This document shows, piece after piece, positions 818 to 49,340 of a stretch of 64,000 nucleotides of DNA. Under the pieces are notes generated by a model. The model was not told where the DNA came from and did no database searches. It saw nothing but the letters and a program-made list of their open reading frames with translations. The DNA is from Mantamonas sphyraenae STR306 (Eukaryota > Protista > CRuMs). The stretch is from the NCBI GenBank assembly GCA_026936335.1, contig JAPMXV010000067.1, positions 248,001 through 312,000 on the forward strand, in the 5' to 3' direction. The translations under genes were made by a program, and so were the position numbers. How positions within the stretch are numbered: the first letter of the stretch is position 1; every line of letters begins with the position of its first letter.

Positions 818-965
818 CGCAACACGTCAGCCAATCCTTCCACATTTCCTCCACTTCCAACCTCTCCTCATGTCCACTTCCCCCCCACCTCCCCTCTCCT
901 CCGTACGTCACCACCAGTTCGCCTTGCACACACCTCTCAGAATCAACTTGCACACCCGGTCGCAC
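818..965. repeat. Left terminal copy of the ~150-190 bp direct repeat bounding the ankyrin array
   Basis: cgcaacacgtcagcca...ctcctcatgtccact...cgccttgcacacacctctca...acccggtcgc recurs at 4746, 7917 and 11972. Confidence 0.85.
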
Positions 966-1179
966 CCACTTTGCTTCCATCACCACAGAACGCCTCGTTT
1001 CCGAGTGAACACCATCCGTGCACCCATCTCGTCGACTGGCATCCCAAAACCAACTGCACGAATCTTCTTTTGTTTCGGTGCTGTGCCCTCGACAGCCAAT
1101 CTTGGTCAATCACTTCCCATGTGCTTCGACACCCAGCTTGTGGGTCTCTCACCCTCCTGGTCCACGACCGATGCACCGA

Positions 1180-4100
1180 TCACCACGCTGCCATCGTGTC
1201 CAGCAGCATCGTCGCCGCTTCTGCGTGAGTCTGCGCAGTTGCAAAACACAACGGGGTCAATCCATGCGGATCCACCTTGTCCACCTCTGCACCATGGCCC
1301 AACAGTACCATCACCATGTCCACGTTACCAAAGGCTGCGGCAACAAACAGTGGCGAGAAGCCGCGGTCATCCGCCTCGTCCACCTCTGCTCCTCTGTCCA
1401 ACAGCATCATCGCCACCTCTGTGTACCCGTTCTGTGCTGCAATGTACAACGGCGTGGCACCGTTCGTCGACGCCTTGTTCACATCTGCTCCTCTGTCCGC
1501 CAGCAACGTCGCCGTCTCCGTATCTCCGTTCTGTGTTGCAATGAGCAACGGCGTCCACCCGTCCCAGTCCCCCTTGTTCACATCTGCTCCTCTGTCCACC
1601 AGCATCATCGCCATACCCGTGTACCCGTTTTGTGCTGCAATGAACAATGGTGTGTCTCCGTTCGCGTCAACATTGTCTACCTCTGCGCCCCTGTCCAGCA
1701 GCATCACCGCTGTCTCCGTATCTCCGTTCTGTGCTGCAATGAACAATGGTGTGTCTCCGTTCGCGTCAACATTGTCTACCTCTGCGCCCCTGTCCAACAG
1801 CATCACCGCTGTTTCCGTGTGCCCATTCTCTGCTGCAATGAACAATGGCGTGGCTCCGTTCACGTTGACCTTGTTCACATCTGCTCCTCTGTCCAGCAGC
1901 ATCGTCGTTGTCTCTGTGTGACCGTTTCGTGAAGCGATGTGTAAAGGCGTCCACCCGTCCCAGTCCCCTTTCTTCACATCTGCGCCCTTGTCCAGCAGCA
2001 TCGTCGCCATCCCCGTGTGACCGTTCTGTGCTGCAATGTACAACGGTGTGGCTCCGTTCGCGTCAACCTTGTCTACCTCTGCTCCCCTGTCCAGCAGCAT
2101 CGTCACCGTCTCTGTGTGTCCGTTCTGTACTGCAATGAGCAACGGCGTCCACCCATCCTCTTCAGCCTTGTTCATATCTGCTCCTCTGTCCAACAGCATC
2201 ACCGCTGTCTCTGTATCTCCGTTCTGTGCGGCAATGTACAACGGTGCGACTCCGTTCACGTCAACCTTGTCTACCTCTGCGCCCCTGTCAACCAGCATCA
2301 CCGCTGTCTCCATGTGCCCATTCTCTGCTGCAATGAACAATGGCGTGGCTCCGTTCACGTTGACCTTGTTCACATCTGCTCCTCTGTCCACCATCATCAT
2401 TGCCATGTCTGTGTGACCATTCCGTGAAGCGATGTGTAACGGCGTCCACCCGTCCCAGTACCCCTTGTCCACATCTGCTCCTCTGTCCACCAGCATCGTC
2501 GCTGTCTCCGTATGTCCCTTCTGTGCTGCAATGCACAACGGTGTGGCTCCTTTCACGGTGACCTTGTCCACCTCTGCGCCTCTGTCCAGCAGCATCGTCA
2601 CCATCTCCGTGTGTCCGTTCTGTGCTGCAATGAATAGCGGTGCGACTCCGTTCACGTTGACCGTGTTTACCTGTGCTCCGTTGTCCAGCAGTATTGTCAC
2701 CATCTCCATGTGCCAGTTCTGTGCTGCAATGCACAATGGCGTGGCACCGTTCACGTCAACCTTGTCCACCTGTGCTCCCCTGTTCAACAGCATCGTCGCC
2801 GTCTCTGTGTGTCCGCACTGTGCTGCAACGTACAACGCTGTGGCTCCGTTTACGTTCCCCTTGTTCACATCTGCTCCTCCGTCCAACAGCATTGTTGCCG
2901 TCTCCGTATCTCCGTTCTGTGCTGCAATGAACAATGGCGTGGCTCTGTTCACGTTGACCTTGTCTACCTCTGCGCCCCTGTTCAGGAGCATCGTCACCAT
3001 CTCCGCATGCCCGTTCTGTGCTGCAATGAATAGCGGTGCGACTCCGTTCACGTCAACCTTTTCTACCTGTGCTCCTCTGTCCACCAGCATCGTCGCCGTC
3101 TCTGTGTGCCCGTTCTGTGCGGCAATGTACAATGGTGTGGCTCCGTTCACGTTGACATTGTCCACCTCTGCTCCCCTGTCCACCAGTATGGCTGCTGTCT
3201 CTGTGTGCCCGTTCTGTGCGGCAATGTACAATGGTGTGGCTCCGTTCACGTTCCCCTTGTTCACTTGTGCGCCCCTGTCCAGCAGCATCGTCGCCGTCTC
3301 CGTATGCCCCTTCTTTGCGGCAATGTACAACGGTGTGGCTCCGTTCTTCAGCGACTCATTCACCCCTGCGCCTCTGTCCAGGAGCATCGTTGCCATCTCT
3401 GTGTGCCCTTGCAGTGCTGCAATGAACAACGGCGTGGCTCCGTTCACGTTCCCCTTGTTCACTTCTGCGCCCCTGTCCAGCAGCATTGTTGCCGTCTCTG
3501 TGTGCCCGTTCTGTGCTGCAATGAGCAACGGCGTCCACCCGTCGTCATCTGCCTTGTTCACTTCTGCGCCCCTGTCCAGCAGCATTGTTGCCGTCTCTGT
3601 GTGCCCGTTCTGTGCTGCAATGAGCAACGGCGTCCACCCGTCCTCTTCTGCCTTGTCCACATCTGCTCCCCTGTCCAGGAGCATCGTCGCCATCTCTGTG
3701 TGCCCGTTCAGCGCTGCAATGTACAACGGTGTGTCACCGTTCACGTTCCCCTTGTTCACTTTTGCGCCCGTGTCCAGCAGCATCGTCGCCATCTCTGTGT
3801 GCCCAATCTGTGCTGCAATGAGCAACGGCGTAGCTCCGTCCTGCGTCGCCATGTCCAACTCTGCGCCTCTCTCTACCAGCATTGTTGCCGTCTCCGTATG
3901 TCCGTTCTGTGCTGCAATGTACAGCGGCGTAGCTCCGTTCGTTCGCGGCTCATTTAACTTTGCTCCCCTGTCCAGCAGCATCACCGCCATCTCAGTGTGC
4001 CCGTTCTCTGCTGCAACGAACAACGGCGTCCACCCCTCCTTGGTCTCCTTGTCCACTTCTGCTCCCCTGTCCACCAGCATCGTTGCCATCTCTGTGTAAC

Positions 4101-4731
4101 CGTTCTGTGCTGCAATGTACAACGGCGTGGCTCCGTCCGTACGCGACTCACCCACCTGTGCTCCCCTGTCTAGCAATATCGTAGCCGTCTCTGTGTGCCC
4201 GTTCTGTGCTGCAATGAACAACGGTGTCCACCCGTCCTTTTTCGCCTTGTCCACTTCTGCTCCCCTGTCCAGAAACACCATTGCCATCTCGGTGTACCCG
4301 TTCTGTGCTGCAATGTACAACGGGGTGGCTCCGTCCTCCAACGCCTTGTCCACCCTTGCTCCCCTGTCCAGCAGTATCGTCACCATCTCTGTGTGCCCGG
4401 TCTCCGCTGCAATGTGTAGCGGCGTCCACGCGTCCCCGTCCGTTTTGTCCACTTCTGCTCCTCTATCCAGCAGCATCGTTGCCGTCTCCGTGTGTCCCTT
4501 ACGTGCTGCCATGTGTAGCGGCGTGCCTCCTTCCGCGTCCGCCTTGTCCACCTCTGCGCCCCTGTCCAGCAGCAGCTCTGCCGCCAAGGTGTTTCCCTCC
4601 GACGCGGCCTGCAGCAACGCCGTCCACCCATCCGTTTTCTGCTCATTCACATCCGCACCCCCATCCATCAACGACTCCATTCCACTCACGTCTCCCTTCT
4701 CCACTGCCCTCATCAGCTCTGTGTCCTGCAT
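1180..4731 (-). CDS. Ankyrin-repeat-only protein, copy 1 (36 repeats); probable short first exon at 4922-4936
   Basis: 1183-aa ORF of 33-aa units GxTPLxIAAxxGHTExAxMLLDRGAxVxK. The lengths 34 + 34x33 + 27 sum to 1183. Confidence 0.95.
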   Translation of the reverse strand: MQDTELMRAVEKGDVSGMESLMDGGADVNEQKTDGWTALLQAASEGNTLAAELLLDRGAEVDKADAEGGTPLHMAARKGHTETATMLLDRGAEVDKTDGDAWTPLHIAAETGHTEMVTILLDRGARVDKALEDGATPLYIAAQNGYTEMAMVFLDRGAEVDKAKKDGWTPLFIAAQNGHTETATILLDRGAQVGESRTDGATPLYIAAQNGYTEMATMLVDRGAEVDKETKEGWTPLFVAAENGHTEMAVMLLDRGAKLNEPRTNGATPLYIAAQNGHTETATMLVERGAELDMATQDGATPLLIAAQIGHTEMATMLLDTGAKVNKGNVNGDTPLYIAALNGHTEMATMLLDRGADVDKAEEDGWTPLLIAAQNGHTETATMLLDRGAEVNKADDDGWTPLLIAAQNGHTETATMLLDRGAEVNKGNVNGATPLFIAALQGHTEMATMLLDRGAGVNESLKNGATPLYIAAKKGHTETATMLLDRGAQVNKGNVNGATPLYIAAQNGHTETAAILVDRGAEVDNVNVNGATPLYIAAQNGHTETATMLVDRGAQVEKVDVNGVAPLFIAAQNGHAEMVTMLLNRGAEVDKVNVNRATPLFIAAQNGDTETATMLLDGGADVNKGNVNGATALYVAAQCGHTETATMLLNRGAQVDKVDVNGATPLCIAAQNWHMEMVTILLDNGAQVNTVNVNGVAPLFIAAQNGHTEMVTMLLDRGAEVDKVTVKGATPLCIAAQKGHTETATMLVDRGADVDKGYWDGWTPLHIASRNGHTDMAMMMVDRGADVNKVNVNGATPLFIAAENGHMETAVMLVDRGAEVDKVDVNGVAPLYIAAQNGDTETAVMLLDRGADMNKAEEDGWTPLLIAVQNGHTETVTMLLDRGAEVDKVDANGATPLYIAAQNGHTGMATMLLDKGADVKKGDWDGWTPLHIASRNGHTETTTMLLDRGADVNKVNVNGATPLFIAAENGHTETAVMLLDRGAEVDNVDANGDTPLFIAAQNGDTETAVMLLDRGAEVDNVDANGDTPLFIAAQNGYTGMAMMLVDRGADVNKGDWDGWTPLLIATQNGDTETATLLADRGADVNKASTNGATPLYIAAQNGYTEVAMMLLDRGAEVDEADDRGFSPLFVAAAFGNVDMVMVLLGHGAEVDKVDPHGLTPLCFATAQTHAEAATMLLDTMAAW

Positions 4732-5136
4732 CCTCGCTCTTCGCTCGCAACACGTCAGCCATATTCCACAGTTCCTTCACCTCTCCCCTCTCCTCATGTC
4801 CACTCCCCCCACCTCCCCTCTCTACCGTACGTCACCAACAGTACGCCTTGCACACACCTCTCACAATCAACTTGCACACCCGGTCGCTCTCGCTCTTCCC
4901 TGTCCCCACTTCTCCAACCACCCACTTTGCTTCCATCACCACAGAACGCCTCGTTTCCGAGTGAACACCATCCGTGCACCCATCTCGTCGACTGGCATCC
5001 CAAAAACCAACTGCACGAATCTTCTTTTGTTTCGGTGCTGTGCCCTCGACAGCCAATCTTGGTCAATCCCTTCCCATGTGCTTCGACACCCAGCTTGTGG
5101 GTCTCTCACCCTCCTGGACTACGACCGATGCACCGA
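4732..5136. repeat. Inter-copy spacer, near-identical to 7903-8306
   Basis: Direct comparison shows only an A-run length difference and a few substitutions. Its right half also matches 963-1179. Confidence 0.9.
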
Positions 5137-7902
5137 TCACCACGCTGCCATCGTGTCCAGCAGCATCGTCGCCGCTTCTGCATGAGTCTTCTCAGTTGCA
5201 AAACACAACGGGGTCAATCCATGCTGATCCACCTTGTCCACTTCTGCTCCATGGTCCAACAGTAGCATCACCATGTCCACGTTCCCTATCTCAGCTGCAA
5301 CAAACAGTGGTGACAAGCCGCGGTCATCTGCTTTGTCCACATCTGCTCCTCTGTCCAACAGCATCGTTGCCATCTCTGTGTGCCCACTCTGTGCTGCGAT
5401 GTGCAACGGCGTCCACCTGTCCCAGTCCCCCTTGTTCGCATCTGCTCCTCTGTCCAACAGCATCATCGCTGTCTCCGTATGTTCGTTCTGCGCTGCAATG
5501 TACAACGGTGTGGCTCCGTTCACGTCAACCTTGTCCACCTGTGCTCCCCTGTCCAGCAGCATCGTCACCGTCTCTGTGTGCCCGTTCTCTGCTGCAATGT
5601 GTAACGGCGTCCACCCATCCTCCTCTTCTGCCCTGTCCACCTCTGCTCCCCTGTCCAGCAGCATCATCGCCGTTTTTGTGTGTCCCCTCTGTGCTGCAAT
5701 GTGTAACGGCGTCCACCCATCCTCCTCTTCTGCCCTGTCCACCTCTGCTCCTCTGTCCAGCAGCATCACCGCCATCTCTGTGTGCCCACTCTGTGCTGCA
5801 ATGTACAACGGTGTGGCATCGTTCACGTTCCCCTGGTTCACATCTGCTCTTCTGTCCAGCAGCATCATCGCTGTTTCCGTATTTCCGTTCTGTGCTGCAA
5901 TGTACAACGGTGTGGCACCGTTCACGTTCCCCTGGTTCACATCTGCTCTTCTGTCCAGCAGCATCGTCACCATCTCTATGTGTCCGTTCTGCGCTGCAAT
6001 GTACAACGGTGTGGCTTCGTCTACGTTGACCTTGTTCACCTGTGCTCCCCTGTTCAATAGCATCGTCGCCGTTTCTGTGTGTCCGTTCTGCGCTGCAATG
6101 TACAACGGTGTGGCTTCGTCTACGTTGACCTTGTTCACCTGTGCTCCCCTGTTCAATAGCATCGTCGCCGTTTCCGTGTGTCCGTTCTGTGCTGCAATGT
6201 ACAACGGCGTGGCTCCGTTCGTACCCGACTTATTCACATCTGCTCCCCTGTCCAGCAGCATCATTGCCATCTCTGTGTGCCCGTTATTTGCTGCAATGTA
6301 CAACGGTGTTGCACCGTTCACGTTGACCTTGTCCACCTCTGCTCCTCTGTCCAGCAGCATCGTCGCCATCTCTGTGTGCCCGCTCACGGCTGCTGCAAAT
6401 AACGGCGTCCATCCGTCCTCCATCGCTTTGTCCACCGTTGCTCCCCTGTCCAGCAGCATCGTCGCCATCTCTGTGTGCCCGCTCACGGCTGCTGCAAATA
6501 ACGGCGTCCATCCGTCCTCCATCGCTTTGTCCACCGTTGCTCCCCTGTCCAGCAGCATCGTCGCTGTCTGTGTGTGCCCTTCCAGTACTGCAACAAACAA
6601 CGGCGTCCACTCGTCCTGCGTCCCCTTGTCCACTTCTGCTCCCCTGTCCAGCAGCATCGTTGCCATCTCTGTGTGTCCGTTCTCTGCTGCAATGTACAAC
6701 GGCGTGCATCCGCTCGTCAAAGGCTTGTCCACCTCTGCTCCCCTGTCCAGCAGCATCACCGCTGTCTCTGTATCTCCGTTCTGTGCTGCAATGTACAACG
6801 GTGTGGCTCCGCTCGTCAAAGGCTTGTCCACCTCTGCTCCCCTGTCCAGCAGCATCGTTGCCATCTCTGTGTGTCCGTTTTCTGCTGCAATGTACAACGG
6901 CGTGCATCCGCTCGTCAAAGGCTTGTCCACCTCTGCTCCCCTGTCCAGCAGCATCGTTGCCGTCTCTGTGTGCCCGTTCTGTGCTGCAATGTGCAACGGC
7001 GTGCACTCGTCCTCTGTCTCCTTGTCCACTTCAGCTCCTCTGTCCAGCAGCATCGCCACGATCTCTCTGTGACCGTTCTTTGATGCAACGAACAAGGCTG
7101 TGACCCCCATCCTCTCCGTCTTGCCCACTTCTGCGCCCGTGTCCAGCAGCATCGTCGCCATCTCTGTGTGCCCAATCTGTGCTGCAATGAGCAACGGCGT
7201 AGCTCCGTCCTGCGTCGCCATGTCCAACTCTGCGCCTCTCTCTACCAGCATTGTTGCCGTCTCCGTATGTCCGTTCTGTGCTGCAATGTACAGCGGCGTG
7301 GCTCCGTTCGTTCGCGGCTCATTTAACTTTGCTCCCCTGTCCAGCAGCATCATTGCCATCTCTGTGTGCCCGTTCTCTGCTGCAACGAACAACGGCGTCC
7401 ACCCCTCCTTGGTCTCCTTGTCCACTTCTGCTCCCCTGTCCAGAAACACCATTGCCATCTCGGTGTACCCGTTCTGTGCTGCAATGTACAACGGGGTGGC
7501 TCCGTCCTCCAACGCCTTGTCCACCCTTGCTCCCCTGTCCAGCAGTATCGTCACCATCTCTGTGTGCCCGGTCTCCGCTGCAATGTGTAGCGGCGTCCAC
7601 GCGTCCCCGTCCGTTTTGTCCACTTCTGCTCCTCTATCCAGCAGCATCGTTGCCGTCTCCGTGTGTCCCTTACGTGCTGCCATGTGTAGCGGCGTGCCTC
7701 CTTCCGCGTCCGCCTTGTCCACCTCTGCGCCCCTGTCCAGCAGCAGCTCTGCCGCCAAGGTGTTTCCCTCCGACGCGGCCTGCAGCAACGCCGTCCACCC
7801 ATCCGTTTTCTGCTCATTCACATCCGCACCCCCATCCATCAACGACTCCATTCCACTCACGTCTCCCTTCTCCACTGCCCTCATCAGCTCTGTGTCCTGC
7901 AT
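5137..7902 (-). CDS. Ankyrin-repeat-only protein, copy 2 (28 repeats, chimeric); probable short first exon at 8093-8107
   Basis: 921-aa ORF. The N-terminal ~160 aa are identical to copy 1 and the C-terminal cap is identical to copy 3. Confidence 0.95.
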   Translation of the reverse strand: MQDTELMRAVEKGDVSGMESLMDGGADVNEQKTDGWTALLQAASEGNTLAAELLLDRGAEVDKADAEGGTPLHMAARKGHTETATMLLDRGAEVDKTDGDAWTPLHIAAETGHTEMVTILLDRGARVDKALEDGATPLYIAAQNGYTEMAMVFLDRGAEVDKETKEGWTPLFVAAENGHTEMAMMLLDRGAKLNEPRTNGATPLYIAAQNGHTETATMLVERGAELDMATQDGATPLLIAAQIGHTEMATMLLDTGAEVGKTERMGVTALFVASKNGHREIVAMLLDRGAEVDKETEDECTPLHIAAQNGHTETATMLLDRGAEVDKPLTSGCTPLYIAAENGHTEMATMLLDRGAEVDKPLTSGATPLYIAAQNGDTETAVMLLDRGAEVDKPLTSGCTPLYIAAENGHTEMATMLLDRGAEVDKGTQDEWTPLFVAVLEGHTQTATMLLDRGATVDKAMEDGWTPLFAAAVSGHTEMATMLLDRGATVDKAMEDGWTPLFAAAVSGHTEMATMLLDRGAEVDKVNVNGATPLYIAANNGHTEMAMMLLDRGADVNKSGTNGATPLYIAAQNGHTETATMLLNRGAQVNKVNVDEATPLYIAAQNGHTETATMLLNRGAQVNKVNVDEATPLYIAAQNGHIEMVTMLLDRRADVNQGNVNGATPLYIAAQNGNTETAMMLLDRRADVNQGNVNDATPLYIAAQSGHTEMAVMLLDRGAEVDRAEEEDGWTPLHIAAQRGHTKTAMMLLDRGAEVDRAEEEDGWTPLHIAAENGHTETVTMLLDRGAQVDKVDVNGATPLYIAAQNEHTETAMMLLDRGADANKGDWDRWTPLHIAAQSGHTEMATMLLDRGADVDKADDRGLSPLFVAAEIGNVDMVMLLLDHGAEVDKVDQHGLTPLCFATEKTHAEAATMLLDTMAAW

Positions 7903-8306
7903 CCTCGCTCTTCGCTCGCAACACGTCAGCCATATTCCACAGTTCCTTCACCTCTCCCCTCTCCTCATGTCCACTCCCCCCACCTCCCCTCTCTACCGTA
8001 CGTCACCAACAGTACGCCTTGCACACACCTCTCACAATCAACTTGCACACCCGGTCGCTCTCGCTCTTCCCTGTCCCCACTTCTCCAACCACCCACTTTG
8101 CTTCCATCACCACAGAACGCCTCGTTTCCGAGTGAACACCATCCGTGCACCCATCTCGTCGACTGGCATCCCAAAACCAACTGCACGAATCTTCTTTTGT
8201 TTCGGTGCTGTGCCCTCGACAGCCAATCTTGGTCAATCCCTTCCCATGTGCTTCGACACCCAGCTTGTGGGTCTCTCACCCTCCTGGACCACGACCGATG
8301 CACCGA
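7903..8306. repeat. Inter-copy spacer, second copy
   Basis: Near-identical to 4732-5136. Confidence 0.9.
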
Positions 8307-11300
8307 TCACCACGCTGCCATCGTGTCCAGCAGCATCGTCGCCGCTTCTGCATGAGTCTTCTCAGTTGCAAAACACAACGGGGTCAATCCATGCTGATCC
8401 ACCTTGTCCACTTCTGCTCCATGGTCCAACAGTAGCATCACCATGTCCACGTTCCCTATCTCAGCTGCAACAAACAGTGGTGACAAGCCGCGGTCATCTG
8501 CTTTGTCCACATCTGCTCCTCTGTCCAACAGCATCGTTGCCATCTCTGTGTGCCCACTCTGTGCTGCGATGTGCAACGGCGTCCACCTGTCCCAGTCCCC
8601 CTTGTTCGCATCTGCTCCTCTGTCCAACAGCATCATCGCTGTCTCCGTATCTCCGTTCTCTGCTGCAATGTGTAACGGCGTGGCTCCGTTCACGTCAACC
8701 TTGTCCACCTCTGCTCCCCTGTCCAGCAGCATCGTCGCTGTCTCTGTGTGCCCGTTCTGTGCTGCAATGAGCAACGGCGTCCACCCATACTCTTCTGCCC
8801 TGTCCACATCTGCTCCCCTGTCCAGCAGCATCGTCGCCGTTTCTGTGTGCCCGTACAGTGCTGCAATGTACAACGGTGTGGCGCCGTTCGTCCGAGACTT
8901 ATTCGCCTCTGCTCCTCTGTCCAGCAGCATCACCGCCATCTCTGTGTGCCCACTCTGTGCTGCAATGTACAACGGTGTGGCACCGTTCACGTTCCCCTGG
9001 TTCACATCTGCTCCTCTGTCCAACAGCATCATCGCTGTTTCCGTATCTCCGTTCTGTGCTGCAATGAACAGCGGCGTGGTTCCGTTCACGTTCGCCTGGT
9101 TCACATCTGCTCTTCTGTCCACCAGCATCATCGCTGTCTCCGTATCTCCGTTCTCTGCTGCAATGTGTAACGGCGTGGCTCCGTCCTCCATCGCCATGTC
9201 CACCTGTGCTCCCCTGTCCAGCAGCATCGTCGCTGTCTCTGTGTGCCCGTTCTGTGCTGCAATGTGTAACGGCGTCCACCCATCCTCTTCTGCCCTGTCC
9301 ACATCTGCTCCCCTGTCCAGCAGCATCGTCGCCGTTTCTGTGTGCCCGTACAGTGCTGCAATGTACAACGGTGTGGCGCCGTTCGTCCGAGACTTATTCG
9401 CCTCTGCTCCTCTGTCCAGCAGCATCACCGCCATCTCTGTGTGCCCACTCTGTGCTGCAATGTACAACGGTGTGGCACCGTTCACGTTCCCCTGGTTCAC
9501 ATCTGCTCTTCTGTCCACCAGCATCATCGCTGTTTCCGTATTCCCGTTCTGTGCTGCAATGTACAACGGTGTGGCACCGTTCACGTTCCCCTGGTTCACA
9601 TCTGCTCCGCTGTCCAGCAGTATCATCGCTGTTTCCGCATCTCCGTTCTGTGCTGCAATGAACAGCGGCGTGGTTCCGTTCACGTTCGCCTTGTCCACTT
9701 CTGCTCCTCTGTCCAGCAGCATCGTCACCATCTCTGTGTGCCCACTCTGCGCTGCAATGTACAACGGTGTGGCTTCGTCTACGTTGACCTTGTTCACCTG
9801 TGCTCCCCTGTTCAACAGCATCGTCGCCGTTTCTGTGTGCCCGTTCTGTGCTGCAATGTACAACGGTGTGGCACCGTTCACGTTCCCCTGGTTCACATCT
9901 GCTCCGCTGTCCACCAGCATCACCGCTGTCTCCGTATCTCCGTTCTGTGCTGCAACGAGCAACGGCGTCCATCCGTCCTCTGTCGCCTTGTCCAACTCTG
10001 CTCCCCTCTTCACCAGCATTGCCAACATCTCCGTGTGTCCGTTCTGTGCTGCAATGTACAACGGCGTGGCTCCGTTCGTACCCGACTTATTCACATCTGC
10101 TCCCCTGTCCAGCAGCATTGCCAACATCTCTGTGTGCCCGTTATTTGCTGCAATGTACAACGGTGTTGCACCGTTCACGTTGACCTTGTCCACCTCTGCT
10201 CCTCTGTCCAGCAGCATCGTCGCCATCTCTGTGTGCCCGCTCACGGCTGCTGCAAATAACGGCGTCCATCCGTCCTCCATCGCTTTGTCCACCGTTGCTC
10301 CCCTGTCCAGCAGCATCGTCGCCATCTCTGTGTGCCCATTCACGGCTGCTGCAAATAACGGCGTCCACTCGTCCTGCGTCCCCTTGTCCACTTCTGCTCC
10401 CCTGTCCAGCAGCATCGTTGCCATCTCTGTGTGTCCGTTCTCTGCTGCAATGTACAATGGTGTGTCTCCGTTCATGTTGACCTTGTCCACCTCTGCTCCC
10501 CTGTCCAGAAGCATCATCGCTGTTTCCGTATGTCCGTTTTCTGCTGCAATGTACAACGGCGTGGCTCCGTTCGTACGCGGCTCATTCACCTTTGCTCCCA
10601 TGTCCACCAGCATCGTCGCCGTCGATGTGTGCCCTTCCAATACTGCAACAAACAACGGTGTCCACTCGTCCTCTGTCTCCTTGTCCACTTCAGCTCCTCT
10701 GTCCAGCAGCATCGCCACGATCTCTCTGTGACCGTTCTTTGATGCAACGAACAAAGCTGTGACCCCCATCCTATCCGTCTTGCCCACTTCTGCGCCCCTG
10801 TCCAGCAGCATCGCCACGATCTCTCTGTGACCGTTCTTTGATGCAACGAGCAACGGCGTCCACCCCTCCTCTGTCGCCTTGTCCACTTCTGCTCCCCTGT
10901 CCAGAATCATCATTGCCATCTCTGTGTACCCGTTCTGGGCTGCAATGTACAACGGCGTGGCTCCGTCCTCCATCGCCATGTCCACCTGTGCTCCCCTGTC
11001 CACAAGCATCGTCACCGTCTCTGTGTGTCCGTCCAGTGCTGCAATGTGTAACGGCGTCCACCCGTCGTCATCTGCCTTGTTCACTTCTGCTCCCCTGTCC
11101 ACCAGCATCGTTGCCGTCTCTGTGTGCCCGTTCTGTGCTGAAATGTGTAACGGCGTCCACCCGAACTCCAATGACTTGTCCACTTCTGCTCCTCTGTCCA
11201 GCAGCATTGTTGCAATATCCGTGTGCCCGTTCTCTGCTGCAACGAACAACGGCGTCCACCCCTCCTTGGTCTCCTTGTCCACCTCTGCTCCCCTGTCCAG

Positions 11301-11957
11301 AATAATCGTTGCCATCTCTGTGTAACCGTTCTGTGCTGCAATGTACAACGGCGTGGCTCCGTCCGTACGCGACTCACCCACCTGTGCTCCCCTGTCCAGA
11401 AACACCATTGCCATCTCGGTGTACCCGTTCTGTGCTGCAATGTACAACGGCGTGGCTCCGTCCTTTTTCGCCTTGTCCACCTCTGCTCCCCTGTCCAGAA
11501 ACACCATTGCCATCTCGGTGTACCCGTTCTGTGCTGCAATGTACAACGGGGTGGCTCCGTCCTCCAACGCCTTGTCCACCCTTGCTCCCCTGTCCAGCAG
11601 TATCGTCACCATCTCTGTGTGCCCGGTCTCCGCTGCAATGTGTAGCGGCGTCCACGCGTCCCCGTCCGTTTTGTCCACTTCTGCTCCTCTATCCAGCAGC
11701 ATTGTCGCCGTCTCCGTGTGTCCCTTACGTGCTGCCATGTGTAGCGGCGTGCCTCCTTCCGCGTCCGCCTTGTCCACCTCTGCGCCCCTGTCCAGCAGCA
11801 GCTCTGCCGCGAGCGTGTTTCCCTCCGACACGGCCTGCAGCAACGCCGTCCACCCATCCGCTTTCTGCTCGTCTACGTCCGCACCCACTTCTATCAACGT
11901 CTCCATTCCACTCACGTCTCCCTTCTCCACTGCCCTCATCAGCTCTGTGTCCTGCAT
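8307..11957 (-). CDS. Ankyrin-repeat-only protein, copy 3 (37 repeats)
   Basis: 1216 aa from MQDTEL at 11957, with the same type of caps. A block of repeats is duplicated internally at a 495-bp offset (about 8790-9010 vs 9285-9505). Confidence 0.95.
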   Translation of the reverse strand: MQDTELMRAVEKGDVSGMETLIEVGADVDEQKADGWTALLQAVSEGNTLAAELLLDRGAEVDKADAEGGTPLHMAARKGHTETATMLLDRGAEVDKTDGDAWTPLHIAAETGHTEMVTILLDRGARVDKALEDGATPLYIAAQNGYTEMAMVFLDRGAEVDKAKKDGATPLYIAAQNGYTEMAMVFLDRGAQVGESRTDGATPLYIAAQNGYTEMATIILDRGAEVDKETKEGWTPLFVAAENGHTDIATMLLDRGAEVDKSLEFGWTPLHISAQNGHTETATMLVDRGAEVNKADDDGWTPLHIAALDGHTETVTMLVDRGAQVDMAMEDGATPLYIAAQNGYTEMAMMILDRGAEVDKATEEGWTPLLVASKNGHREIVAMLLDRGAEVGKTDRMGVTALFVASKNGHREIVAMLLDRGAEVDKETEDEWTPLFVAVLEGHTSTATMLVDMGAKVNEPRTNGATPLYIAAENGHTETAMMLLDRGAEVDKVNMNGDTPLYIAAENGHTEMATMLLDRGAEVDKGTQDEWTPLFAAAVNGHTEMATMLLDRGATVDKAMEDGWTPLFAAAVSGHTEMATMLLDRGAEVDKVNVNGATPLYIAANNGHTEMLAMLLDRGADVNKSGTNGATPLYIAAQNGHTEMLAMLVKRGAELDKATEDGWTPLLVAAQNGDTETAVMLVDSGADVNQGNVNGATPLYIAAQNGHTETATMLLNRGAQVNKVNVDEATPLYIAAQSGHTEMVTMLLDRGAEVDKANVNGTTPLFIAAQNGDAETAMILLDSGADVNQGNVNGATPLYIAAQNGNTETAMMLVDRRADVNQGNVNGATPLYIAAQSGHTEMAVMLLDRGAEANKSRTNGATPLYIAALYGHTETATMLLDRGADVDRAEEDGWTPLHIAAQNGHTETATMLLDRGAQVDMAMEDGATPLHIAAENGDTETAMMLVDRRADVNQANVNGTTPLFIAAQNGDTETAMMLLDRGADVNQGNVNGATPLYIAAQSGHTEMAVMLLDRGAEANKSRTNGATPLYIAALYGHTETATMLLDRGADVDRAEEYGWTPLLIAAQNGHTETATMLLDRGAEVDKVDVNGATPLHIAAENGDTETAMMLLDRGADANKGDWDRWTPLHIAAQSGHTEMATMLLDRGADVDKADDRGLSPLFVAAEIGNVDMVMLLLDHGAEVDKVDQHGLTPLCFATEKTHAEAATMLLDTMAAW

Positions 11958-11971
11958 CCTCGCTCTTCGCT

Positions 11972-12165
11972 CGCAACACGTCAGCCAATATTCCACAGTT
12001 CCTTCACCTCTCCCCTCTCCTCATGTCCACTCCCCCACCTCCCCTCCCCACCTCCCCTCCCCACCAGTTCGCCTTGCACACACCTCTCACAATCAATCCA
12101 ATTGCGCCTCCTCGCGCATACCAACCCGGTCGCCTTCTTCCCTGTCCCCGCTCCTCCAACCACCC
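11972..12165. repeat. Right terminal copy of the direct repeat (probable intron of ankyrin copy 3)
   Basis: Diverged homolog of 818-965, 4746-4921 and 7917-8092. Confidence 0.8.
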
Positions 12166-12308: not shown

Positions 12309-14641
12309 TCACCGGTTCAAGGACATCAGCTTGTCAAACAATCCCGCTACAAACGGCGTGAGCTTCGTCCGGTTGTAAAAGTCACCACATCGACGAAGCG
12401 CGTCCATCTGCGTGGGATACGGATGAATCACGGTTGCCTGGCTCGCCATGCTGACCCCGTTCACCATACACGTCGTCACCTCGCTGATCATGTCACCGGC
12501 ATTCTCTGCCACAATCGTCCCGCCCAGAATGGCCCCGCTGCTGTTCACGTGAACCCGCACAAATCCTTGCTCCTCCCCGTCGCAAATTGCACGGTCGTTG
12601 TCCGCAAGCATCACCTCGTACGTGCTGTACTCCACTCCTGCTTCCTCCAGCTCTTGAGGGTACGATCCCACGTGCGCCAGTTCCGGGCTCGTGTACGTGC
12701 ACCAAGGCACCACCAACGACGACTCTTTCGCCCGCCCATAGAACAAAGCGTTGCGGATCACCAGCCGCGCGTGCCAGTCCGACACGTGCGTAAACTTAAA
12801 CTTGGAGCACACGTCTCCCACGCCGTAGATGTTGCTCACCGTCGTCTGCAGCGAGTCCGACACCGTCAGGCCCTTCTTGGCGTCGTACTCCACGCCAATC
12901 TCCTCCAGGTTCATCCCCTCCACGTTTGGTTTGCGACCCGTTGCCACCAGCAGCTCGTCCACCACGTACGTCTGCACCTCGCCTGTTGTCTCGTTCCGCA
13001 CGTCCACCTCGATCTCTCCCGCCTCGTTCTCGCGCACCTCCTCGTATGCAATGCCCAGCACCATCTCAACACCATCGCTTGCCATCTGACCCTGCACCAC
13101 CGCCGCCGCATCTGCCTCCTCCGTCTTCAGGATGCCTTCCGAGCGCCCAAACAGATACGTTTCCGATCCAAACCGCGCAAACGCTTGCGCCATTTCGCAC
13201 CCGATGGCTCCCGTGCCAATCACGCCAAATCGTCGTGGCAGCTCCTCCAGGTTAAACAGGGTCGCGTTCGTCAGGAAACGTACGCCGTCGATGCCCTTGA
13301 TCGGCGGCACCGCTGCGCGTGCTCCCGTCGCAATCACCGCCTTGGTGAAATTCAGCTGCTGGCCGTTCACACTCACGCAGTTGCGGTTTTCAAACTGCGC
13401 GTGGCCGATAAACACGTCAATGCCCAGCTCCGTGAACCGGTGCACAGAGTCGTTCGGCGCAATCTTGGCCCGAATCGCACGCATACGCTCCATAATCGCA
13501 CCAAAGTCCACCTTCACCTCTCCTTGCACCTCCACTCCAAAGCTGGCGCTGTTCTTTACCTCCCAGCACGTGCGTGCGCATCGCAGCAGTGCCTTGGACG
13601 GCACGCAGCCCACGTTCAGGCAGTCTCCCCCATACAGGTGCTCCTCAATAATGGCCACACGTGCGCCGACGCCTGCACTGCCAGCTGCCGTCACCAACCC
13701 GCCTGCACCGGCTCCAATCACAACCACGTTGTAGTTCTCCGCCGGCGTCGGGTTGATCCACTCCTCCGGGTGCACGTGCTTGATCAGCTCCTGGTTGTGC
13801 TCGTCCATGGGCGACAGGTTCAACTCGGACGGGTCCGTGTTCACCACTCGCTCAGACGCAGGGAACCCACGTGTCAACGTGTGCAGAAACGCATCCGCCT
13901 CCTTTGACGACAGCGGCGGCAGAAGCGCCGCCAGAGCCTGCTCCACGCCCCCCACCCCCACCACATCACCCAACTCTGTGTCAGCGAGCCTTTCTCCCTT
14001 TCCCCTCACTCATCACCGCTCTTGGGCGCCACCCTTCCACCCAAAAAGAAAAGCCCCGTTCCAGGGTGCCCGCCTGCCTGTTCCCTGCACCTCTCTCCCT
14101 CTCTCTCCTCTTCCCCCCATTCAACCCGTCACCCACCTCCTTTTCCATCCCCTGTGCCTCGTTCTCGGTCCCGTTCAGCTTCTCCACAAACTCTGGGTCG
14201 TGGTGACGGAACCGATAGTACAACGCCTCGTCCTTCAGCTCGTGGTCGTTCGTCACGTGCTGAAACAGCCCGTTGCGATACTGCCCTCCCACACCACCAT
14301 CCACACATCCCATGTCAGTCCTCTCTTTCACCAGCCCTCACCCTCACCCTCACCCTCACCCCTCCGTCCCCTCCGTCCCCTCCTCACCAACTCACCAGCA
14401 CGTTGCCCATCTCCACTGCCACCTCACGGTCGCCAGCATAGTTGTTCTTGATCAGCCAGTCCACGAGCTCCGTGCCCACAAAGCAGTTCTCGTATGTGCG
14501 GAAGAAGTACGTGCGGTCCTTCACCTGCACCCCCTTGGGTCCAGACACCTCCTGCGCCAGCTGCTGGTAGCGCTGGTCCACGTTGATCTCCTCCTCGCTC
14601 CCTTCTCCCGTTGTTGTCACTTTGCCATCAGTCGTGGACAT
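12309..14641 (-). CDS. DEP domain fused to a class-I pyridine nucleotide-disulfide oxidoreductase (mercuric-reductase-like); exons 14641-14396, 14280-14137, 13937-12309 (~672 aa)
   Basis: Exons 1-2 encode VKDRTYFFRTYENCFVGTELVDWL...GLFQHV...LYYRF (DEP). Exon 3 has GAGAGG, GGDCLNVGCVPSKAL, GTGAIG, YGVGD and HPYPT. Both introns are phase 0 GT...CTGAC...CAG. Confidence 0.85.
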
Positions 14642-45635: not shown

Positions 45636-48600
45636 TCACACGCGTGCAAGGAGCTCGTCAATGGCCATCATGTTGTCTTGGTTGTCATGGCCATAGGCAA
45701 TATCACCGGCACTGCTGCTGCTGCTGCTGCTGCTGCTGCTACTGGACCTGCCGCCGAGCGGGGCTGTGGAGGTGCTGCTGCCTGCACCATAGAACACCGA
45801 GGGGTGCTCCAGATGCCACATGACCACTTCGTAAAGCCAGTCAAAGTTGTGGAACTTGGCAATGCTCGCAAATGTGCGGAGGTTGCGGCGGAACTCGTCG
45901 GCGTTTGTGCGCAGACGGTAGGTGCCCGTGCAGGAGCAGGACTCGTCGAGGTTGGCTCGTTTGATGGTGCCACAGTTGACACAGTATGCATCTTGGAGCT
46001 GGTAGGACAGCGACTTGTCCTGGATGATGTTGACCAGGCGCGTTTCGACGGCGGCCTTGTTGTACGGGTGGTTGCACTGGCTGCATCGCCACTTGTGCTC
46101 AATCAGGTTGTGCTCACGGCAAAGATCCAGGTCGCAAGCAAAGTCGCAGTATTGGCAGATGACATCTTGGAGCACGTAGGTGAGGCATGGGTCGCGGAAC
46201 TGCGCCTCGGGTGCAAACTCGCCCACCTGGATGGTACGCAGCAGATTCTTCTTCATGATGCGCACCGACTCTCGGATCTCCGGGTCCAGAGCAAACACGT
46301 GACACAAAAAGTTGACCAATTCCAGCGCAGGGTTGGTCATCTTACGGTGGGAGCCCGGCAACTCCGGGAACGAGCTGCCCGTCGTGTCCGAGTGCATCTG
46401 CTCGTGGATGCCTTCCACCACTTTGAAGAGCTTGCTGGAAAAGTGCACGTTGATCAGGCGATTGCGTTGGTCGCGCAGCCAGTCCTCTGCCATCTTCTTC
46501 TTGGCTGCCTTGATGTCCATTACGCTGCCACCCAGGTTGGTCAGCTTGTTCTCGCCAGAGTTTTCGTCGTTGAAGCCCCCCATGGCCGACAGAGAGCCTG
46601 CGCCTCGTTTCTCGCCAAGGGTGGCATCCAAACCCACACCCGTCTTGCACTTGCGCTCCAGCGCGTCCTGCTTCATCATGAACTGCACCACAAAGTGTTC
46701 AAACAGCTGTTGGATGTGCTCGGGCAGGTATGTGGCAATGTTAAACTCATACATCAGATGCTTCTGCTCGGCTGTGCTTCCTGTCGTTCCCCGCTGCTTC
46801 CCTCGGCCACCGCTCCCTGCATGTGCCTGGGCGTGCTCCTGGGCCAATTGTTGCGAGTCCAGATGCATGGCTTCTGACAGCGACGTGGTGTCGCCCTCAC
46901 CCTGGGATGCAGCAGCCGCAGCGGCAGCCGCCTCCTGGGCCGCCTGCTGCTCCAACAGATGCTCGCGCCACACCTCTTCGGCCTTCTTGTTGAAGCCTGC
47001 GTAGTTGGCACGGTCCATGTACACAAAGTGCGACCAGTAGTCGGTGGGGTCGATCTCCAGATGGGAGAACAAATCGCGCTTGCGGATGACGTGGAGGATG
47101 TAGCGCACGTAGGCCTGTGCGTTGCGAAAGTCGCTCTTGTTGGTGCCAATGATGATCTTGTTGAAGTTTGCATACACAATCGTGGAGCCCAGGCGCTGCA
47201 GCTCGCCCAGCAGCTGCTGGAAAACCTTTCGCATCAGCTTGTGCACGATGTAGGCCAGCATGGGGTCGTGTGATTCGGCACTGACGGTGCGCACCCAGCG
47301 GTAAAAGTGCTGGGCCACGTTGTCTGCAAAGCCGTTGCTGTGCTCCACGGCGTCCTGCACCCACTGATGCACAAGCGACTTGAGGATGCGAAACGCAGAC
47401 GCACAGCGCACCGACTCGTCCATGATGTTGTACGACGACACCATCTTGTCAGCGCCGCTGCTGCTCAGGCTAGTCGTGGCCACAAAGTCCAGGCCTCCGT
47501 CGTCCAGGAACGAGGAGCGGATCACGGCGTTCACCGCCAGGTTGCTCAGGTGCAACGAGACACACACGTTGCGGTACACGCCTGCCTGAAGCAGCTCCGG
47601 GTTGCTCAGCTCTTCTGCAAACAGGTTCTCGTCCGTTTGCGACCCTCCCAGATCCGGCCGCTTGGACTTGCTCGTCCACAGCAGGCTCTTGGCTCGCTTG
47701 AGCTGGCGTGCGTACATGAGGTCGGCCACAAAGACAGGGTGGTCGCGTGTGAGGTTGCCTACAGGGGCCAGGGCAAAGCGTGCATAGCCCACCTGATCCA
47801 TGAACCATTCGTGGGCGCTCAGGTAGTAGCTGACCAGTCGGTCGCTGATGAATGTCTGCCAGCCCAGCTGCGGGAACTGCAGGTCCTGGCCATTGGTCAG
47901 CAGCTGCAAGGTGGGGAACTTGTCCAGGGCCTTGGCCATCTTGCGCAGGCGGTCATGCTTGACGCTCGACTGCACAATCAACAGCGTGGGTCCTTCCAGA
48001 CCGGCGTACGTGTTCAGCACCTGCTGCATGCGGTTTTGTGCTCGCTTGCGCGTGTCCATGTGCAGTTCAATGGCCATGTCTGCGTCGTAACCCTGCTGCG
48101 TCAACGTGGAGGCGCGGCGTGCAAAGTGCTCGCGGTACAGGCGGTCGATGTTGGGCCGGTCGACGTTGTTGATGCCACGCGAGGCAAAGCACATCACGTC
48201 TGCGCTGCTGCCGTCCATGTTGATGACAGCCGCCATGCCGTGGCCGTTGCGCTCGCAGTAAAACACAAAGATCTTGCGGAAGGAGACGTCGGGCAGATAG
48301 GGATACTCGGCAGTGTTGCGGAACTGCAGGTCCTCCATGTCAAACACGTCTTGGTTGATGCGCTTGGTGCGTGCGTGCTTCTTGACCGAGACCACACAGC
48401 CGAGCTGTTGGATGGCACGCGACAGCAGAGGCACCTGCGTCTCGTACACTCCTTCCACGTCGCTGGATTGGAACAGCTGCCGCAGCGCCTTGGCCTCCTC
48501 TTGGTAGGCCTGCTCGCTCATGCGCACCTCGTACAGATAGCCTGCTTTTTTGCTGTGTGGCAGTTCCATGGTCACAGGCTTCATCACTGACTCGTCCACT

Positions 48601-49309
48601 TGCGCTGGCTCGTGCTGGTTGACATACAGCACACGAGGCACACGCAGGTGCACCTGTCGGAACTCTCCACCTGTCATCACCCACGTACGGAACACTCCAG
48701 GCTCCACGGGTGTGCTCTCGATGCCCACAATGCTCCAGAACCGCGTCGATGCCATATGCTCGGCCCGTCGGCTGGCGCTTCCTGGCGCAATCAACCCTGC
48801 GCCACGTCCGCCTGCATGTTCCAGTTCCATCAACGGCTGCGCAGGCGACGGCGTCACTGTGGACTGGTCGCGCTGCGCACGCGCCTTGCGCTCCTTGCGC
48901 TGCAGCTTCCACTTCCACTTCATGTACCGCAGCCACTCCTGAGCGTCTTCTTCACGAGTGCACGGTGGCTCTGCTGGCAGGTCGCGCAATGAGCGGAATC
49001 GGCGCGAACGCGGGTCGAATTCACTTTCCAGCTCCTCCTCGTCGACCCCAGCCTGGTTCTTGCCCTTGCCACGGCGTTTGCGCTTGGGGTCGTAGAAGCC
49101 TGTGTTGCTTGCGCGTTCCATCTCGATGCGCTGCTGGAACCGTGCAAACTGGCTCTCCATCACGTCCAGCTGCCTGCGGCTGCCGCCCGCTTCAGACCCT
49201 GCCTTCTTGGTCACTCGGGGTCGTCCCAGTTTCGTTGGCGATTCGCCTGAGATGGTGTACCCAATGTTTTCGATTTCGGTCAGGGCCATAGAGCCGACGC
49301 CGTCTGTGG

Positions 49310-49340
<31 letters not shown>

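What the first reader, a model, noticed from the sequence alone, without database searches (positions are those of the whole stretch)
1180..11957. Natural DARPin-like ankyrin repertoire: fixed caps with shuffled 99-bp cassettes, a candidate diversifying recognition (immune-like) system
Seen: three tandem genes are made only of ankyrin repeats (36, 28 and 37 units). The first ~5 and last ~2 units are conserved, while the middle units differ in number and order. Length differences are whole multiples of 99 bp (plus two single-codon insertions), with no stop or frameshift in about 10 kb. The scaffold GxTPLxIAAxxGHTE...LLDRGAxV is nearly invariant. Variation concentrates in the beta-turn (NVNGA, DWDGW, MEDGW, LTSGC, RTNGA, EEDGW, TQDEW) and helix 1 (Y/F/H/L/C; QN/EN/LY/VS/RN/KK). 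The same turn cassettes recur with different helix cassettes, which implies recombination within repeats. Known: these positions form the target-binding surface that is randomised in designed ankyrin repeat proteins. Inference: this is a recombination-driven library of intracellular binders, for example for pathogen or virus sensing, analogous to shuffled LRR/TPR receptors. No effector domain is visible.
Basis: partly seen in the sequence, partly recalled or inferred. Interest (0 to 1): 0.8.

Follow-up and report, generated by a model that had tools for sequence, protein, structure and literature searches.

The report
Three tandem giant ankyrin-repeat genes
Three neighbouring genes in a protist genome (its statistics match Mantamonas sphyraenae) encode proteins made only of 28 to 37 ankyrin repeats; they change by ordinary unequal crossing-over and show no sign of immune-like diversifying selection, though their closest relatives carry a GTPase switch.

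Summary
The described sequence is real. There are three intact minus-strand genes of 36, 28 and 37 ankyrin (ANK) units. Their ends are near-identical and their lengths differ by whole 99-bp units. Variation peaks at unit positions 1, 2, 3, 5, 9, 13, 14 and 33.

The immune-like reading is not borne out:
- These same positions are the variable ones in unrelated ANK proteins (rho 0.75).
- Surface sites give pN/pS of 0.5-0.95, and the turn sites alone 1.3 (not significant).
- Units average only 72% nucleotide and 62% amino-acid identity, about the same as to a cluster on another contig. The scaffold is therefore old and held by purifying selection.
- Unit order is collinear between genes, not shuffled.
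- Turn and helix residues are tightly coupled (W5 never pairs with Y9).

Recombination is real but generic. Gene B is the expected product of an unequal crossover (5' part from A, 3' part from C), and units are in-register mosaics (z = 11.5).

New context: about 15 genes share the N-terminal cap. Two clusters are ANK-only. Six full-length paralogs (plus one truncated copy) join 5-17 ANK units to a conserved, divergent LRR-Roc-COR-like module.

Reads could not test array order, and no RNA data were available. Other readers of this scan noted the same stretch, and other variable LRR/ANK/ROCO families elsewhere in this genome.

The parts
1180..4731 (-). Gene A: ANK-only protein of 1183 aa, 36 units (N-terminal half unit plus 35). 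Its middle units 10-33 are the most diverged from genes B and C.
   Evidence: ORF and translation; Pfam finds ANK only; unit segmentation; unit identities.
5137..7902 (-). Gene B: ANK-only protein of 921 aa, 28 units. It is a recombinant. Units 1-4 match A1-4 and units 5-7 match A7-9 at 95-100%. Units 8-27 are collinear with C12-36, and the last three are 100% identical to C. It holds the two 34-aa units and the B-specific LTSG units 10-12.
8307..11957 (-). Gene C: ANK-only protein of 1216 aa counted from the conserved ATG at 11957, 37 units. It has an internal two-unit duplication (C25-26 = C30-31, 100% identical).
   Evidence: The Met is at the same position in all 15 family members.
4732..5136 (-). 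Spacer between B and A (3' flank of B plus 5' flank of A). It is 99.8% identical to the C/B spacer.
7903..8306 (-). Spacer between C and B.
818..1179 (-). Copy of the spacer downstream of gene A (95.8% identity over 358 nt). It ends 14 nt before the position where a fourth ATG would lie. This is the end of the tandem duplication unit.
11958..12165 (-). Upstream flank of gene C, homologous (94%) to the promoter-proximal 190 nt of the spacers. This is the start of the tandem array.

Best explanation
These are three tandemly duplicated, most likely single-exon genes for very long cytosolic ankyrin solenoids (28-37 repeats). They belong to a lineage-specific family of about 15 genes that share one N-terminal cap and one repeat consensus (xxDGxTPLxIAAQNGHTETATMLLDRGAEVDKA). 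The other members are a second ANK-only tandem cluster and paralogs in which 5-17 such repeats precede an LRR and a divergent Roc-COR-like GTPase module.

The arrays change in the germline by ordinary in-register homologous recombination: unequal crossing-over and gene conversion between 99-bp units. This adds, deletes and hybridises whole units while keeping the reading frame. Gene B is the product of one such crossover between A and C. Purifying selection holds the structural scaffold, and the concave-surface positions are close to neutral.

The inferred function is protein-protein interaction scaffolding. These proteins may act as free ANK modules working alongside the GTPase-bearing paralogs. 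That last step is inference only.
For: Shown:
- Intact ORFs that contain only ANK domains.
- Collinear unit maps with whole-unit gaps.
- B combines the 5' part of A with the 3' part of C, the outcome expected from a misaligned A x C exchange in a C-A tandem. The spacers are 99.8% identical.
- Hybrid units with breakpoints in register. For example, B17 equals the first 51 nt of C19 plus the last 48 nt of B18 with no mismatch. Overall z = 11.5.
- Scaffold pN/pS is 0.32-0.49 and surface pN/pS is 0.54-0.95.
- Mean unit identity is 73% within the cluster and 72% to the C51 cluster on another contig, with the same consensus in all three groups. The scaffold is therefore old and selected, not recently homogenised.
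- Family census and tree.
- The paralogs' post-ANK module is 79-86% identical with dN/dS of 0.24-0.36. It has a GxxxxGKT P-loop and DxxGQ and THxD motifs. All six remote profile hits that were scanned carry Roc in the matched stretch, and two also carry COR-A/COR-B.
- The genome statistics (25.06 Mb, 78 contigs, GC about 59%) match the PacBio FALCON assembly of Mantamonas sphyraenae, whose genes are described as mostly mono-exonic (PMC10492846).
Against: - There is no expression evidence. No RNA run holds the stretch, and the exact proteins are not in the protein collection.
- The order of units and genes rests on the assembly alone. The available runs are short-read contigs of 100-600 nt, which cannot span a unit array.
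- The turn sites taken alone give pN/pS of 1.3 here and 1.6 in the GTPase-type paralogs. Neither is significant, but weak diversifying selection is not excluded.
- The Roc-COR assignment of the paralogs rests on weak matches (E = 4e-7 to 7e-4), and the structure model failed (pLDDT 33).
- The proposed cellular role is untested.
Confidence: 0.62

Rival explanations
1. This is an immune-like diversifying repertoire. The ANK arrays would be a library of intracellular binders kept diverse by positive selection and recombination, to sense pathogens or viruses.
For: - Variation is concentrated on the binding surface.
- Genes lie in tandem clusters with variable unit numbers, in two clusters.
- Intra-unit mosaics are present.
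- Turn-site pN/pS is 1.3-1.6 in two of the three groups, though not significant.
- Paralogs join a variable ANK array (5-17 units) to a constant GTPase module, an NLR-like or ROCO-like layout.
- There is precedent in the LRR-ROCO genes of brown algae (PMC3341825) and in fungal NLR ANK repeats (PMC4986451).
Against: - There is no significant dN excess. The full surface set gives 0.54-0.95, and the second ANK-only cluster gives 0.71 at the turn sites.
- The variable positions are the generic ones of ANK repeats.
- Units are old, with pS of about 0.4.
- Unit order is collinear.
- Positions 5 and 9 are coupled rather than freely assorted.
- The locus is interior to its contig, among housekeeping genes.
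- There is no infection, expression or population data.
Confidence: 0.12
2. This is an assembly artefact. The three copies, or the chimeric gene B, would come from collapsed or mis-joined haplotypes or repeats.
For: - B looks like a join of A and C, with stretches 100% identical to each.
- The spacers are 99.8% identical.
- The short-read contigs are fragmented, and none spans the array.
Against: - B carries units found in neither A nor C. B10-12 match A or C units at 91% or less.
- Contigs from three short-read runs lie on that part of B (tables 2 and 8).
- The reading frame is intact over all 10 kb.
- The source assembly is a polished long-read assembly in which most contigs end in telomeres (PMC10492846).
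- A second cluster on another contig shows the same kind of unit-number variation.
Confidence: 0.06
3. These are redundant, decaying duplicates with no function of their own: truncated 5' copies of GTPase-type genes drifting neutrally.
For: - The proteins are ANK-only, ending shortly after the last ANK unit.
- Surface sites are near neutral.
- There is no expression evidence.
Against: - There are no stops or frameshifts in 3320 codons.
- Scaffold pN/pS is 0.32-0.49 even in young unit pairs.
- The arrays are longer (28-37 units) than in the GTPase-type paralogs (5-17 units), so they expanded rather than decayed.
Confidence: 0.08

Closest known systems
Fungal NLR repeat domains (ANK, TPR, WD) with high internal conservation (Dyrka et al. 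2014, PMC4986451)
   Same: Long ANK arrays with a conserved scaffold. Variation lies on the concave face. Repeat number varies, and repeats are exchanged within and between paralogs.
   Different: The fungal class is defined by repeats at least 85% identical, positive selection at a few sites, and attachment to a NACHT or NB-ARC domain. Here repeats average 62% amino-acid identity, no dN excess is detectable, and there is no NOD domain.
LRR-ROCO and NB-ARC-TPR candidate receptors of the brown alga Ectocarpus (Zambounis et al. 2012, PMC3341825)
   Same: A variable repeat array is joined to a Roc-COR GTPase in clustered, fast-changing gene families of a protist. This applies to the paralogs of the window genes.
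   Different: In Ectocarpus the variable part is LRR, each repeat is a separate exon, shuffling breaks collinearity, and positive selection was reported. Here the variable part is ANK inside one exon, order is collinear, and the window genes lack Roc-COR altogether.
Designed ankyrin repeat proteins (DARPins) and consensus ANK designs
   Same: The 33-aa consensus-like scaffold is shared. All six positions randomised in DARPins (2, 3, 5, 13, 14, 33) are among the eight most variable positions here. DARPin chains are strong PDB matches.
   Different: DARPin positions were taken from natural ANK variability, so the overlap is expected for any ANK family. The pooled control arrays show the same six positions in their top eight. 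Natural units here show coupled, not independent, residues, and 28-37 repeats instead of 4-6.
Long natural ANK solenoids: ankyrin-R/B/G membrane-binding domain (24 repeats) and NOMPC (29 repeats)
   Same: These are the best solved-structure matches (4rlv E = 3e-206, 7tw3, 5vkq). They are uninterrupted ANK superhelices used as interaction platforms or springs.
   Different: Those proteins carry further domains (ZU5-death domain, or an ion channel) and more diverged repeats (mean entropy 1.9 bits against 1.17 here). The window proteins are ANK-only and longer.
ROCO proteins (LRRK2-type ANK-LRR-Roc-COR)
   Same: The closest paralogs have the order ANK - LRR - P-loop GTPase with a THxD motif - a COR-like region.
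   Different: The window genes stop after the last ANK unit. The paralogs have no kinase, and their Roc-COR is so divergent that Pfam does not reach threshold (Roc E = 0.42).

Membership tests
Ankyrin repeat proteins (Pfam Ank, Ank_2) | 33-residue helix-turn-helix units that match the ANK profiles | tested here: met
   Ank_2 and Ank match all three proteins at E = 1e-216 to 1e-303, with 25-33 separate stretches. Units are spaced exactly 33 aa apart.
Fungal-type repeat arrays with high internal conservation | Repeats of one gene at least about 85% identical in amino acids | tested here: not met
   Mean unit identity is 62% in amino acids and 73% in nucleotides. Only a few pairs exceed 90%.
Fungal-type repeat arrays with high internal conservation | Positive selection at interaction-surface positions | tested here: not met
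   pN/pS is 0.54-0.95 at the eight variable sites. The turn sites alone give 1.30, P = 0.34. The tests were pairwise counts, not recombination-aware codon models.
Fungal-type repeat arrays with high internal conservation | Array attached to a NACHT or NB-ARC nucleotide-binding domain | tested here: not met
   No such domain is found in the three proteins. The paralogs carry a Roc-like GTPase instead.
Concerted evolution of repeats | Units within one locus more alike than units of different loci | tested here: not met
   Mean nucleotide identity is 0.732 within the window cluster and 0.717 to the C51 cluster.
Combinatorial binder library (DARPin-like) | Variable residues confined to the binding surface | tested here: met
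   The top-entropy positions are 1, 2, 3, 5, 9, 13, 14 and 33. The same profile holds for unrelated ANK arrays (rho 0.75), so this feature does not discriminate.
Combinatorial binder library (DARPin-like) | Variable positions assorted independently | tested here: not met
   Variable positions are strongly coupled. Positions 5 and 9 give z = 13, and positions 1 and 2 give z = 17.6. W5 never occurs with Y9.
Programmed or somatic cassette diversification (VLR- or VSG-like) | Array differs between cells or clones; donor cassettes and dedicated enzymes present | not testable with these tools
   Only short-read contigs from one study were available. No recombinase, reverse transcriptase or deaminase gene turned up among the 20 larger window ORFs scanned with Pfam.
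ROCO proteins | Roc GTPase followed by a COR domain | tested here: not met
   For the three window genes, the proteins end after the last ANK unit.
ROCO proteins (paralogs on other contigs) | Roc GTPase followed by a COR domain | tested here: inconclusive
   G1, G3 and G4 motifs are present (GHGGQGKT, DYGGQ, THAD). Pfam Roc reaches only E = 0.42. The profile of six paralogs finds 8 proteins at E = 4e-7 to 7e-4. All six that were scanned carry Roc, and two also carry COR-A/COR-B, in the matched stretch. The AlphaFold model was unusable.

The most novel reading that the evidence does not exclude
The shared-cap ANK array may be the variable recognition module of a ROCO-based surveillance system in a deep-branching eukaryote (CRuMs). 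In this reading, the paralogs with a constant LRR-Roc-COR-like module and 5-17 ANK units are the signalling receptors. The two ANK-only tandem clusters (10-37 units) would serve as free sensors, decoys or adaptors that feed into them. Unequal crossing-over would supply new surfaces.
Probability: 0.1. Interest if true: 0.75.

Novelty: new member of a known kind. Interest (0 to 1): 0.35.

Why it matters
The finding documents a clean example of how a long repeat protein grows, shrinks and hybridises by in-register unequal crossing-over, including one gene whose two parents sit on either side of it.

It also shows that overlap with DARPin randomised positions is not, by itself, evidence for a natural binder library. 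Any ANK family shows that overlap.

The more useful lead is the family context. An orphan, divergent Roc-COR-like GTPase family with ANK arrays of variable length, plus ANK-only offshoots, lies in the first sequenced genome of the CRuMs supergroup. If these proteins proved to be receptors, repeat-plus-switch surveillance proteins would extend to a lineage near the base of Amorphea. Nothing here shows that yet.

Tried and rejected
- **Read evidence.** The four holder runs are short-read contigs from one study, mostly 100-600 nt over the array. The 'joints' they show have short sides and are expected from paralogous mosaic units. They cannot test unit order, haplotype collapse or somatic change. 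No RNA run was listed.
- **Relatives of the N-terminal cap.** The search was swamped by generic ANK proteins at 50% identity or less, so no orthologue could be identified.
- **Exact look-up of the three proteins.** They are not in the collection.
- **Word-based homology search of the paralogs' post-LRR region.** No hit.
- **AlphaFold2 on the six-sequence alignment of that region.** Mean pLDDT was 33, which is unusable, so no fold search was run.
- **Alignment of the C-terminal cap with the last ANK units of a GTPase-type paralog.** Only generic ANK alignments resulted. The idea that the window genes are cut exactly at the ANK/LRR boundary remains an impression.
- **One spliced mega-gene.** Joining the GT that overlaps the stop codon to the AG inside 'ATGCAG' gives a stop within six codons, read. 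Rejected.
All 15 family members have Met at this position, with unrelated sequence upstream. An ordinary start codon is therefore more likely.
- **First BLAST attempts with identity filters.** They returned nothing, because alignments ran through the whole array. I replaced them with unit-level matrices.
Full report
**What is there.** The minus strand of window 1180-11957 holds three long open reading frames. They are A at 1180-4731 (1183 aa), B at 5137-7902 (921 aa) and C at 8307-11957 (1216 aa counted from the conserved ATG). Pfam finds nothing but ankyrin (ANK) families, at E-values of 1e-216 to 1e-303. Tandem Repeats Finder sees a single array of period 99 with 105 copies. TPL-type anchors are spaced exactly 33 residues apart. 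With the N-terminal half unit this gives 36, 28 and 37 units. The only indels are two 34-residue units in B. The length differences follow: C minus A is 99 nt, and A minus B is 8 x 99 minus 6 nt.

**Which genome.** The genome has 25,061,354 bases in 78 contigs, and the window's GC content is about 59%. Neighbouring genes are eukaryotic: DNA polymerase epsilon, Integrator subunit 3 and an ataxin-10 homologue. The polymerase has no close relative in the protein collection; the best local identities are about 70%, to fungi. The published FALCON PacBio assembly of Mantamonas sphyraenae has exactly these figures (25.06 Mb, 78 primary contigs, GC 59.19%), and its genes are described as mostly mono-exonic (PMC10492846). 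That paper does not contain the word ankyrin. The array lies about 250 kb into a 393-kb contig, among housekeeping genes, so it is not subtelomeric.

**Where the variation lies and what it means.** Across the 95 full units, entropy is highest at positions 1, 2, 3, 5, 9, 13, 14 and 33, counting the residue five before the T of TPL as position 1. All six positions randomised in DARPins are in this set. This is not special to this locus. I cut the repeats of 13 unrelated ANK proteins (vertebrate ankyrins, ANKRD50, fungal NACHT-ANK proteins and others) into the same 33 columns. Their pooled variability profile correlates with this one at Spearman 0.75 (P = 5e-7), and the same six positions are in their top eight. 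What does stand out is a tighter scaffold: mean entropy is 1.17 bits, against about 1.9 for vertebrate ankyrins. This resembles some fungal NLR-type arrays, at 0.6-0.96 bits.

**Selection.** Over all unit pairs, synonymous divergence is high everywhere (pS about 0.4-0.47). pN/pS is 0.95 at the eight variable sites and 0.37 elsewhere. All-pairs counts are close to saturation, so I also took 29 independent nearest-neighbour unit pairs with 85-99% identity. These give 0.69 at the variable sites against 0.36 at the scaffold sites. The contrast is significant (odds ratio 3.0, P = 5e-4), but there is no excess over 1 (P = 0.93). The youngest pairs give 0.54. The turn positions alone (1, 2, 3, 5) give 1.30 with P = 0.34. 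The same test gives 0.71 in the second ANK-only cluster and 1.56 (P = 0.24) in the GTPase-type paralogs. Surface sites therefore look relaxed to roughly neutral. Weak diversifying selection at the turn cannot be excluded, but it is not demonstrated.

**Age of the units.** Mean unit identity is 73% in nucleotides and 62% in amino acids within the window. It is 72% and 60% to the units of a cluster on another contig. The consensus (xxDGxTPLxIAAQNGHTETATMLLDRGAEVDKA) is the same in all three groups of the family. The scaffold is thus an old family-wide consensus held by purifying selection. It is not the result of recent amplification or of homogenisation within the locus.

**Recombination.** At unit level, B1-4 equal A1-4 (99-100%) and B5-7 equal A7-9 (95-99%). 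B8 to B27 run collinearly with C12 to C36, and the last three units are 100% identical to C. The transcriptional order of the genes is C, B, A. A misaligned exchange between A on one chromatid and C on the other yields exactly C - (5' part of A, 3' part of C) - A. The two spacers are 99.8% identical. The array starts about 210 nt upstream of C, at 12165. It ends in a spacer copy below A (1179 to 818) that stops 14 nt short of a fourth ATG.

All inter-gene unit matches of 90% or more are on a collinear path or are explained by internal duplicates such as C25-26 = C30-31. The genes therefore differ in unit number, not in unit order.

Within units, differences are spatially clustered, so that many units are exact hybrids of two others with the breakpoint in register. 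For example, B17 equals the first 51 nt of C19 plus the last 48 nt of B18, with no mismatch. Summed over all units, the two-parent improvement is 287, against 159 +/- 11 for column-shuffled alignments (z = 11.5). These are the footprints of unequal crossing-over and gene conversion inside a tandem repeat. They explain why one turn type can sit next to different helix types.

Assortment is far from free, however. W at position 5 occurs with H, L or F at position 9 and never with Y (0 of 32). A at position 5 goes with Y in 33 of 43 units.

**The family.** A search of the genome with the first 99 residues finds about 15 genes with the same cap at 60-69% identity. From the fetched loci they fall into three groups:
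- the three window genes;
- a second tandem cluster of five ANK-only genes with 10-33 units on contig 51, beside a sixth, more divergent one;
- paralogs on contigs 74 (three genes), 56, 52 and 51, in which 5-17 ANK units are followed by a short LRR and about 700 further residues.

That downstream module is 79-86% identical among six paralogs, with dN/dS of 0.24-0.36. It has a GHGGQGKT P-loop, DYGGQ and THAD motifs, and only sub-threshold Pfam matches (GTP_EFTU 3e-4, Roc 0.42). A profile of the six sequences, scored against 1.8 billion representative proteins, finds only eight proteins (E = 4e-7 to 7e-4). All six that I scanned carry a Roc domain in the matched stretch, and two also carry COR-A/COR-B. 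The paralogs are thus best read as very divergent ROCO-like GTPases with a constant switch and an ANK array of variable length.

A tree of the caps resolves each tandem cluster as a clade but not the order of the clades. Whether the ANK-only genes derive from GTPase-type genes is therefore open.

**Gene models.** Met lies at the same position in all 15 members, with unrelated sequence upstream. Joining the three ORFs by splicing at the obvious GT and AG gives an immediate stop (read).

**What could not be tested.** The only public runs that hold the stretch are four short-read data sets from one study, kept as contigs. Over the array they are 100-600 nt long. They lie on B-specific units, but they cannot test unit order, haplotype collapse or somatic variation. 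The apparent joints have short sides and are what paralogous mosaic units would produce. No RNA run was listed. The exact proteins are not in the protein collection. The structure model of the GTPase module failed (pLDDT 33).

**Comparison with known systems.** The nearest described phenomenon is the class of fungal NLR repeat domains with high internal conservation. Those are ANK, TPR or WD units at least 85% identical, with repeat-number polymorphism, repeat exchange and positive selection on the concave face (PMC4986451). The window arrays share the architecture and the recombination. They fail the identity criterion, the selection criterion and the NOD-domain criterion.

The brown-alga LRR-ROCO genes (PMC3341825) are the nearest parallel for the paralogs. 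There, however, the variable module is LRR, it is built from separate exons, and it is reported to be under positive selection.

By sequence, the best solved relatives are the 24-repeat ankyrin membrane-binding domain, NOMPC and DARPins.

**Verdict.** The mechanism that generates the differences is ordinary germline unequal recombination. The tests that could be run do not support the diversifying, immune-like function. I rate this a new member of a known kind. Interest is moderate to low for the locus itself. One lead is worth keeping: a divergent ROCO-like family with variable ANK arrays and ANK-only offshoots in a deep-branching protist.

Noticed in passing
L019:3156-6260 (+); L014:450-3788 and 6100-9828 (-); L026:1885-6111 (-); L015:1744-5889 (-); L017:2235-5663 (-): Six paralogs have the same N-terminal cap, 5-17 ANK units, a short LRR, a P-loop GTPase with DxxGQ and THxD motifs, a COR-like stretch and a C-terminal coiled-coil tail. 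The post-ANK part is 79-86% identical between them and is almost an orphan in public protein space (8 weak hits; all six scanned carry Roc).
   Followed up: partly
L013 and L025 (contig 51, about 207.8-222.6 kb): This is a second tandem cluster of ANK-only genes: five of 441-1152 aa (10-33 units) with the same cap and repeat consensus, plus a sixth, more divergent 390-aa one. Turn-site pN/pS there is 0.71.
   Followed up: partly
L016 (contig 56, about 194.4-195.6 kb): A 388-aa relative of the contig-56 GTPase-type gene keeps the cap, six ANK units and the start of the LRR, then ends. It is probably a truncated duplicate.
   Followed up: no
window 818-1179: A copy of the inter-gene spacer lies downstream of gene A. 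It stops 14 nt before the place of a fourth start codon and abuts the end of the next gene. I read it as the boundary of the tandem duplication unit rather than as an orphan exon.
   Followed up: partly
window 4763-4765 and 7934-7936 (minus strand): An out-of-frame ATG lies 31 nt upstream of the start codons of A and B. The same place upstream of C reads ATT. It could be a short upstream ORF that differs between copies.
   Followed up: no
window units, positions 5 and 9 of the repeat: There are two unit classes: D-G-W with H, L or F at position 9, and N-G-A with Y at position 9. W5 and Y9 never occur together. This may reflect packing between the turn and helix 1, or two old unit lineages.
   Followed up: partly
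window 45636-50255 and 50622-52709 (minus strand): DNA polymerase epsilon is split over two ORFs: the exonuclease domain in one, and the thumb, DUF1744 and zinc fingers in the other. This is consistent with an intron in a genome described as mostly mono-exonic.
   Followed up: no
window 12309-14009 (minus strand): A pyridine nucleotide-disulphide oxidoreductase lies directly upstream of the array. Another reader noted a DEP domain fused to it.
   Followed up: no
   Followed up: yes
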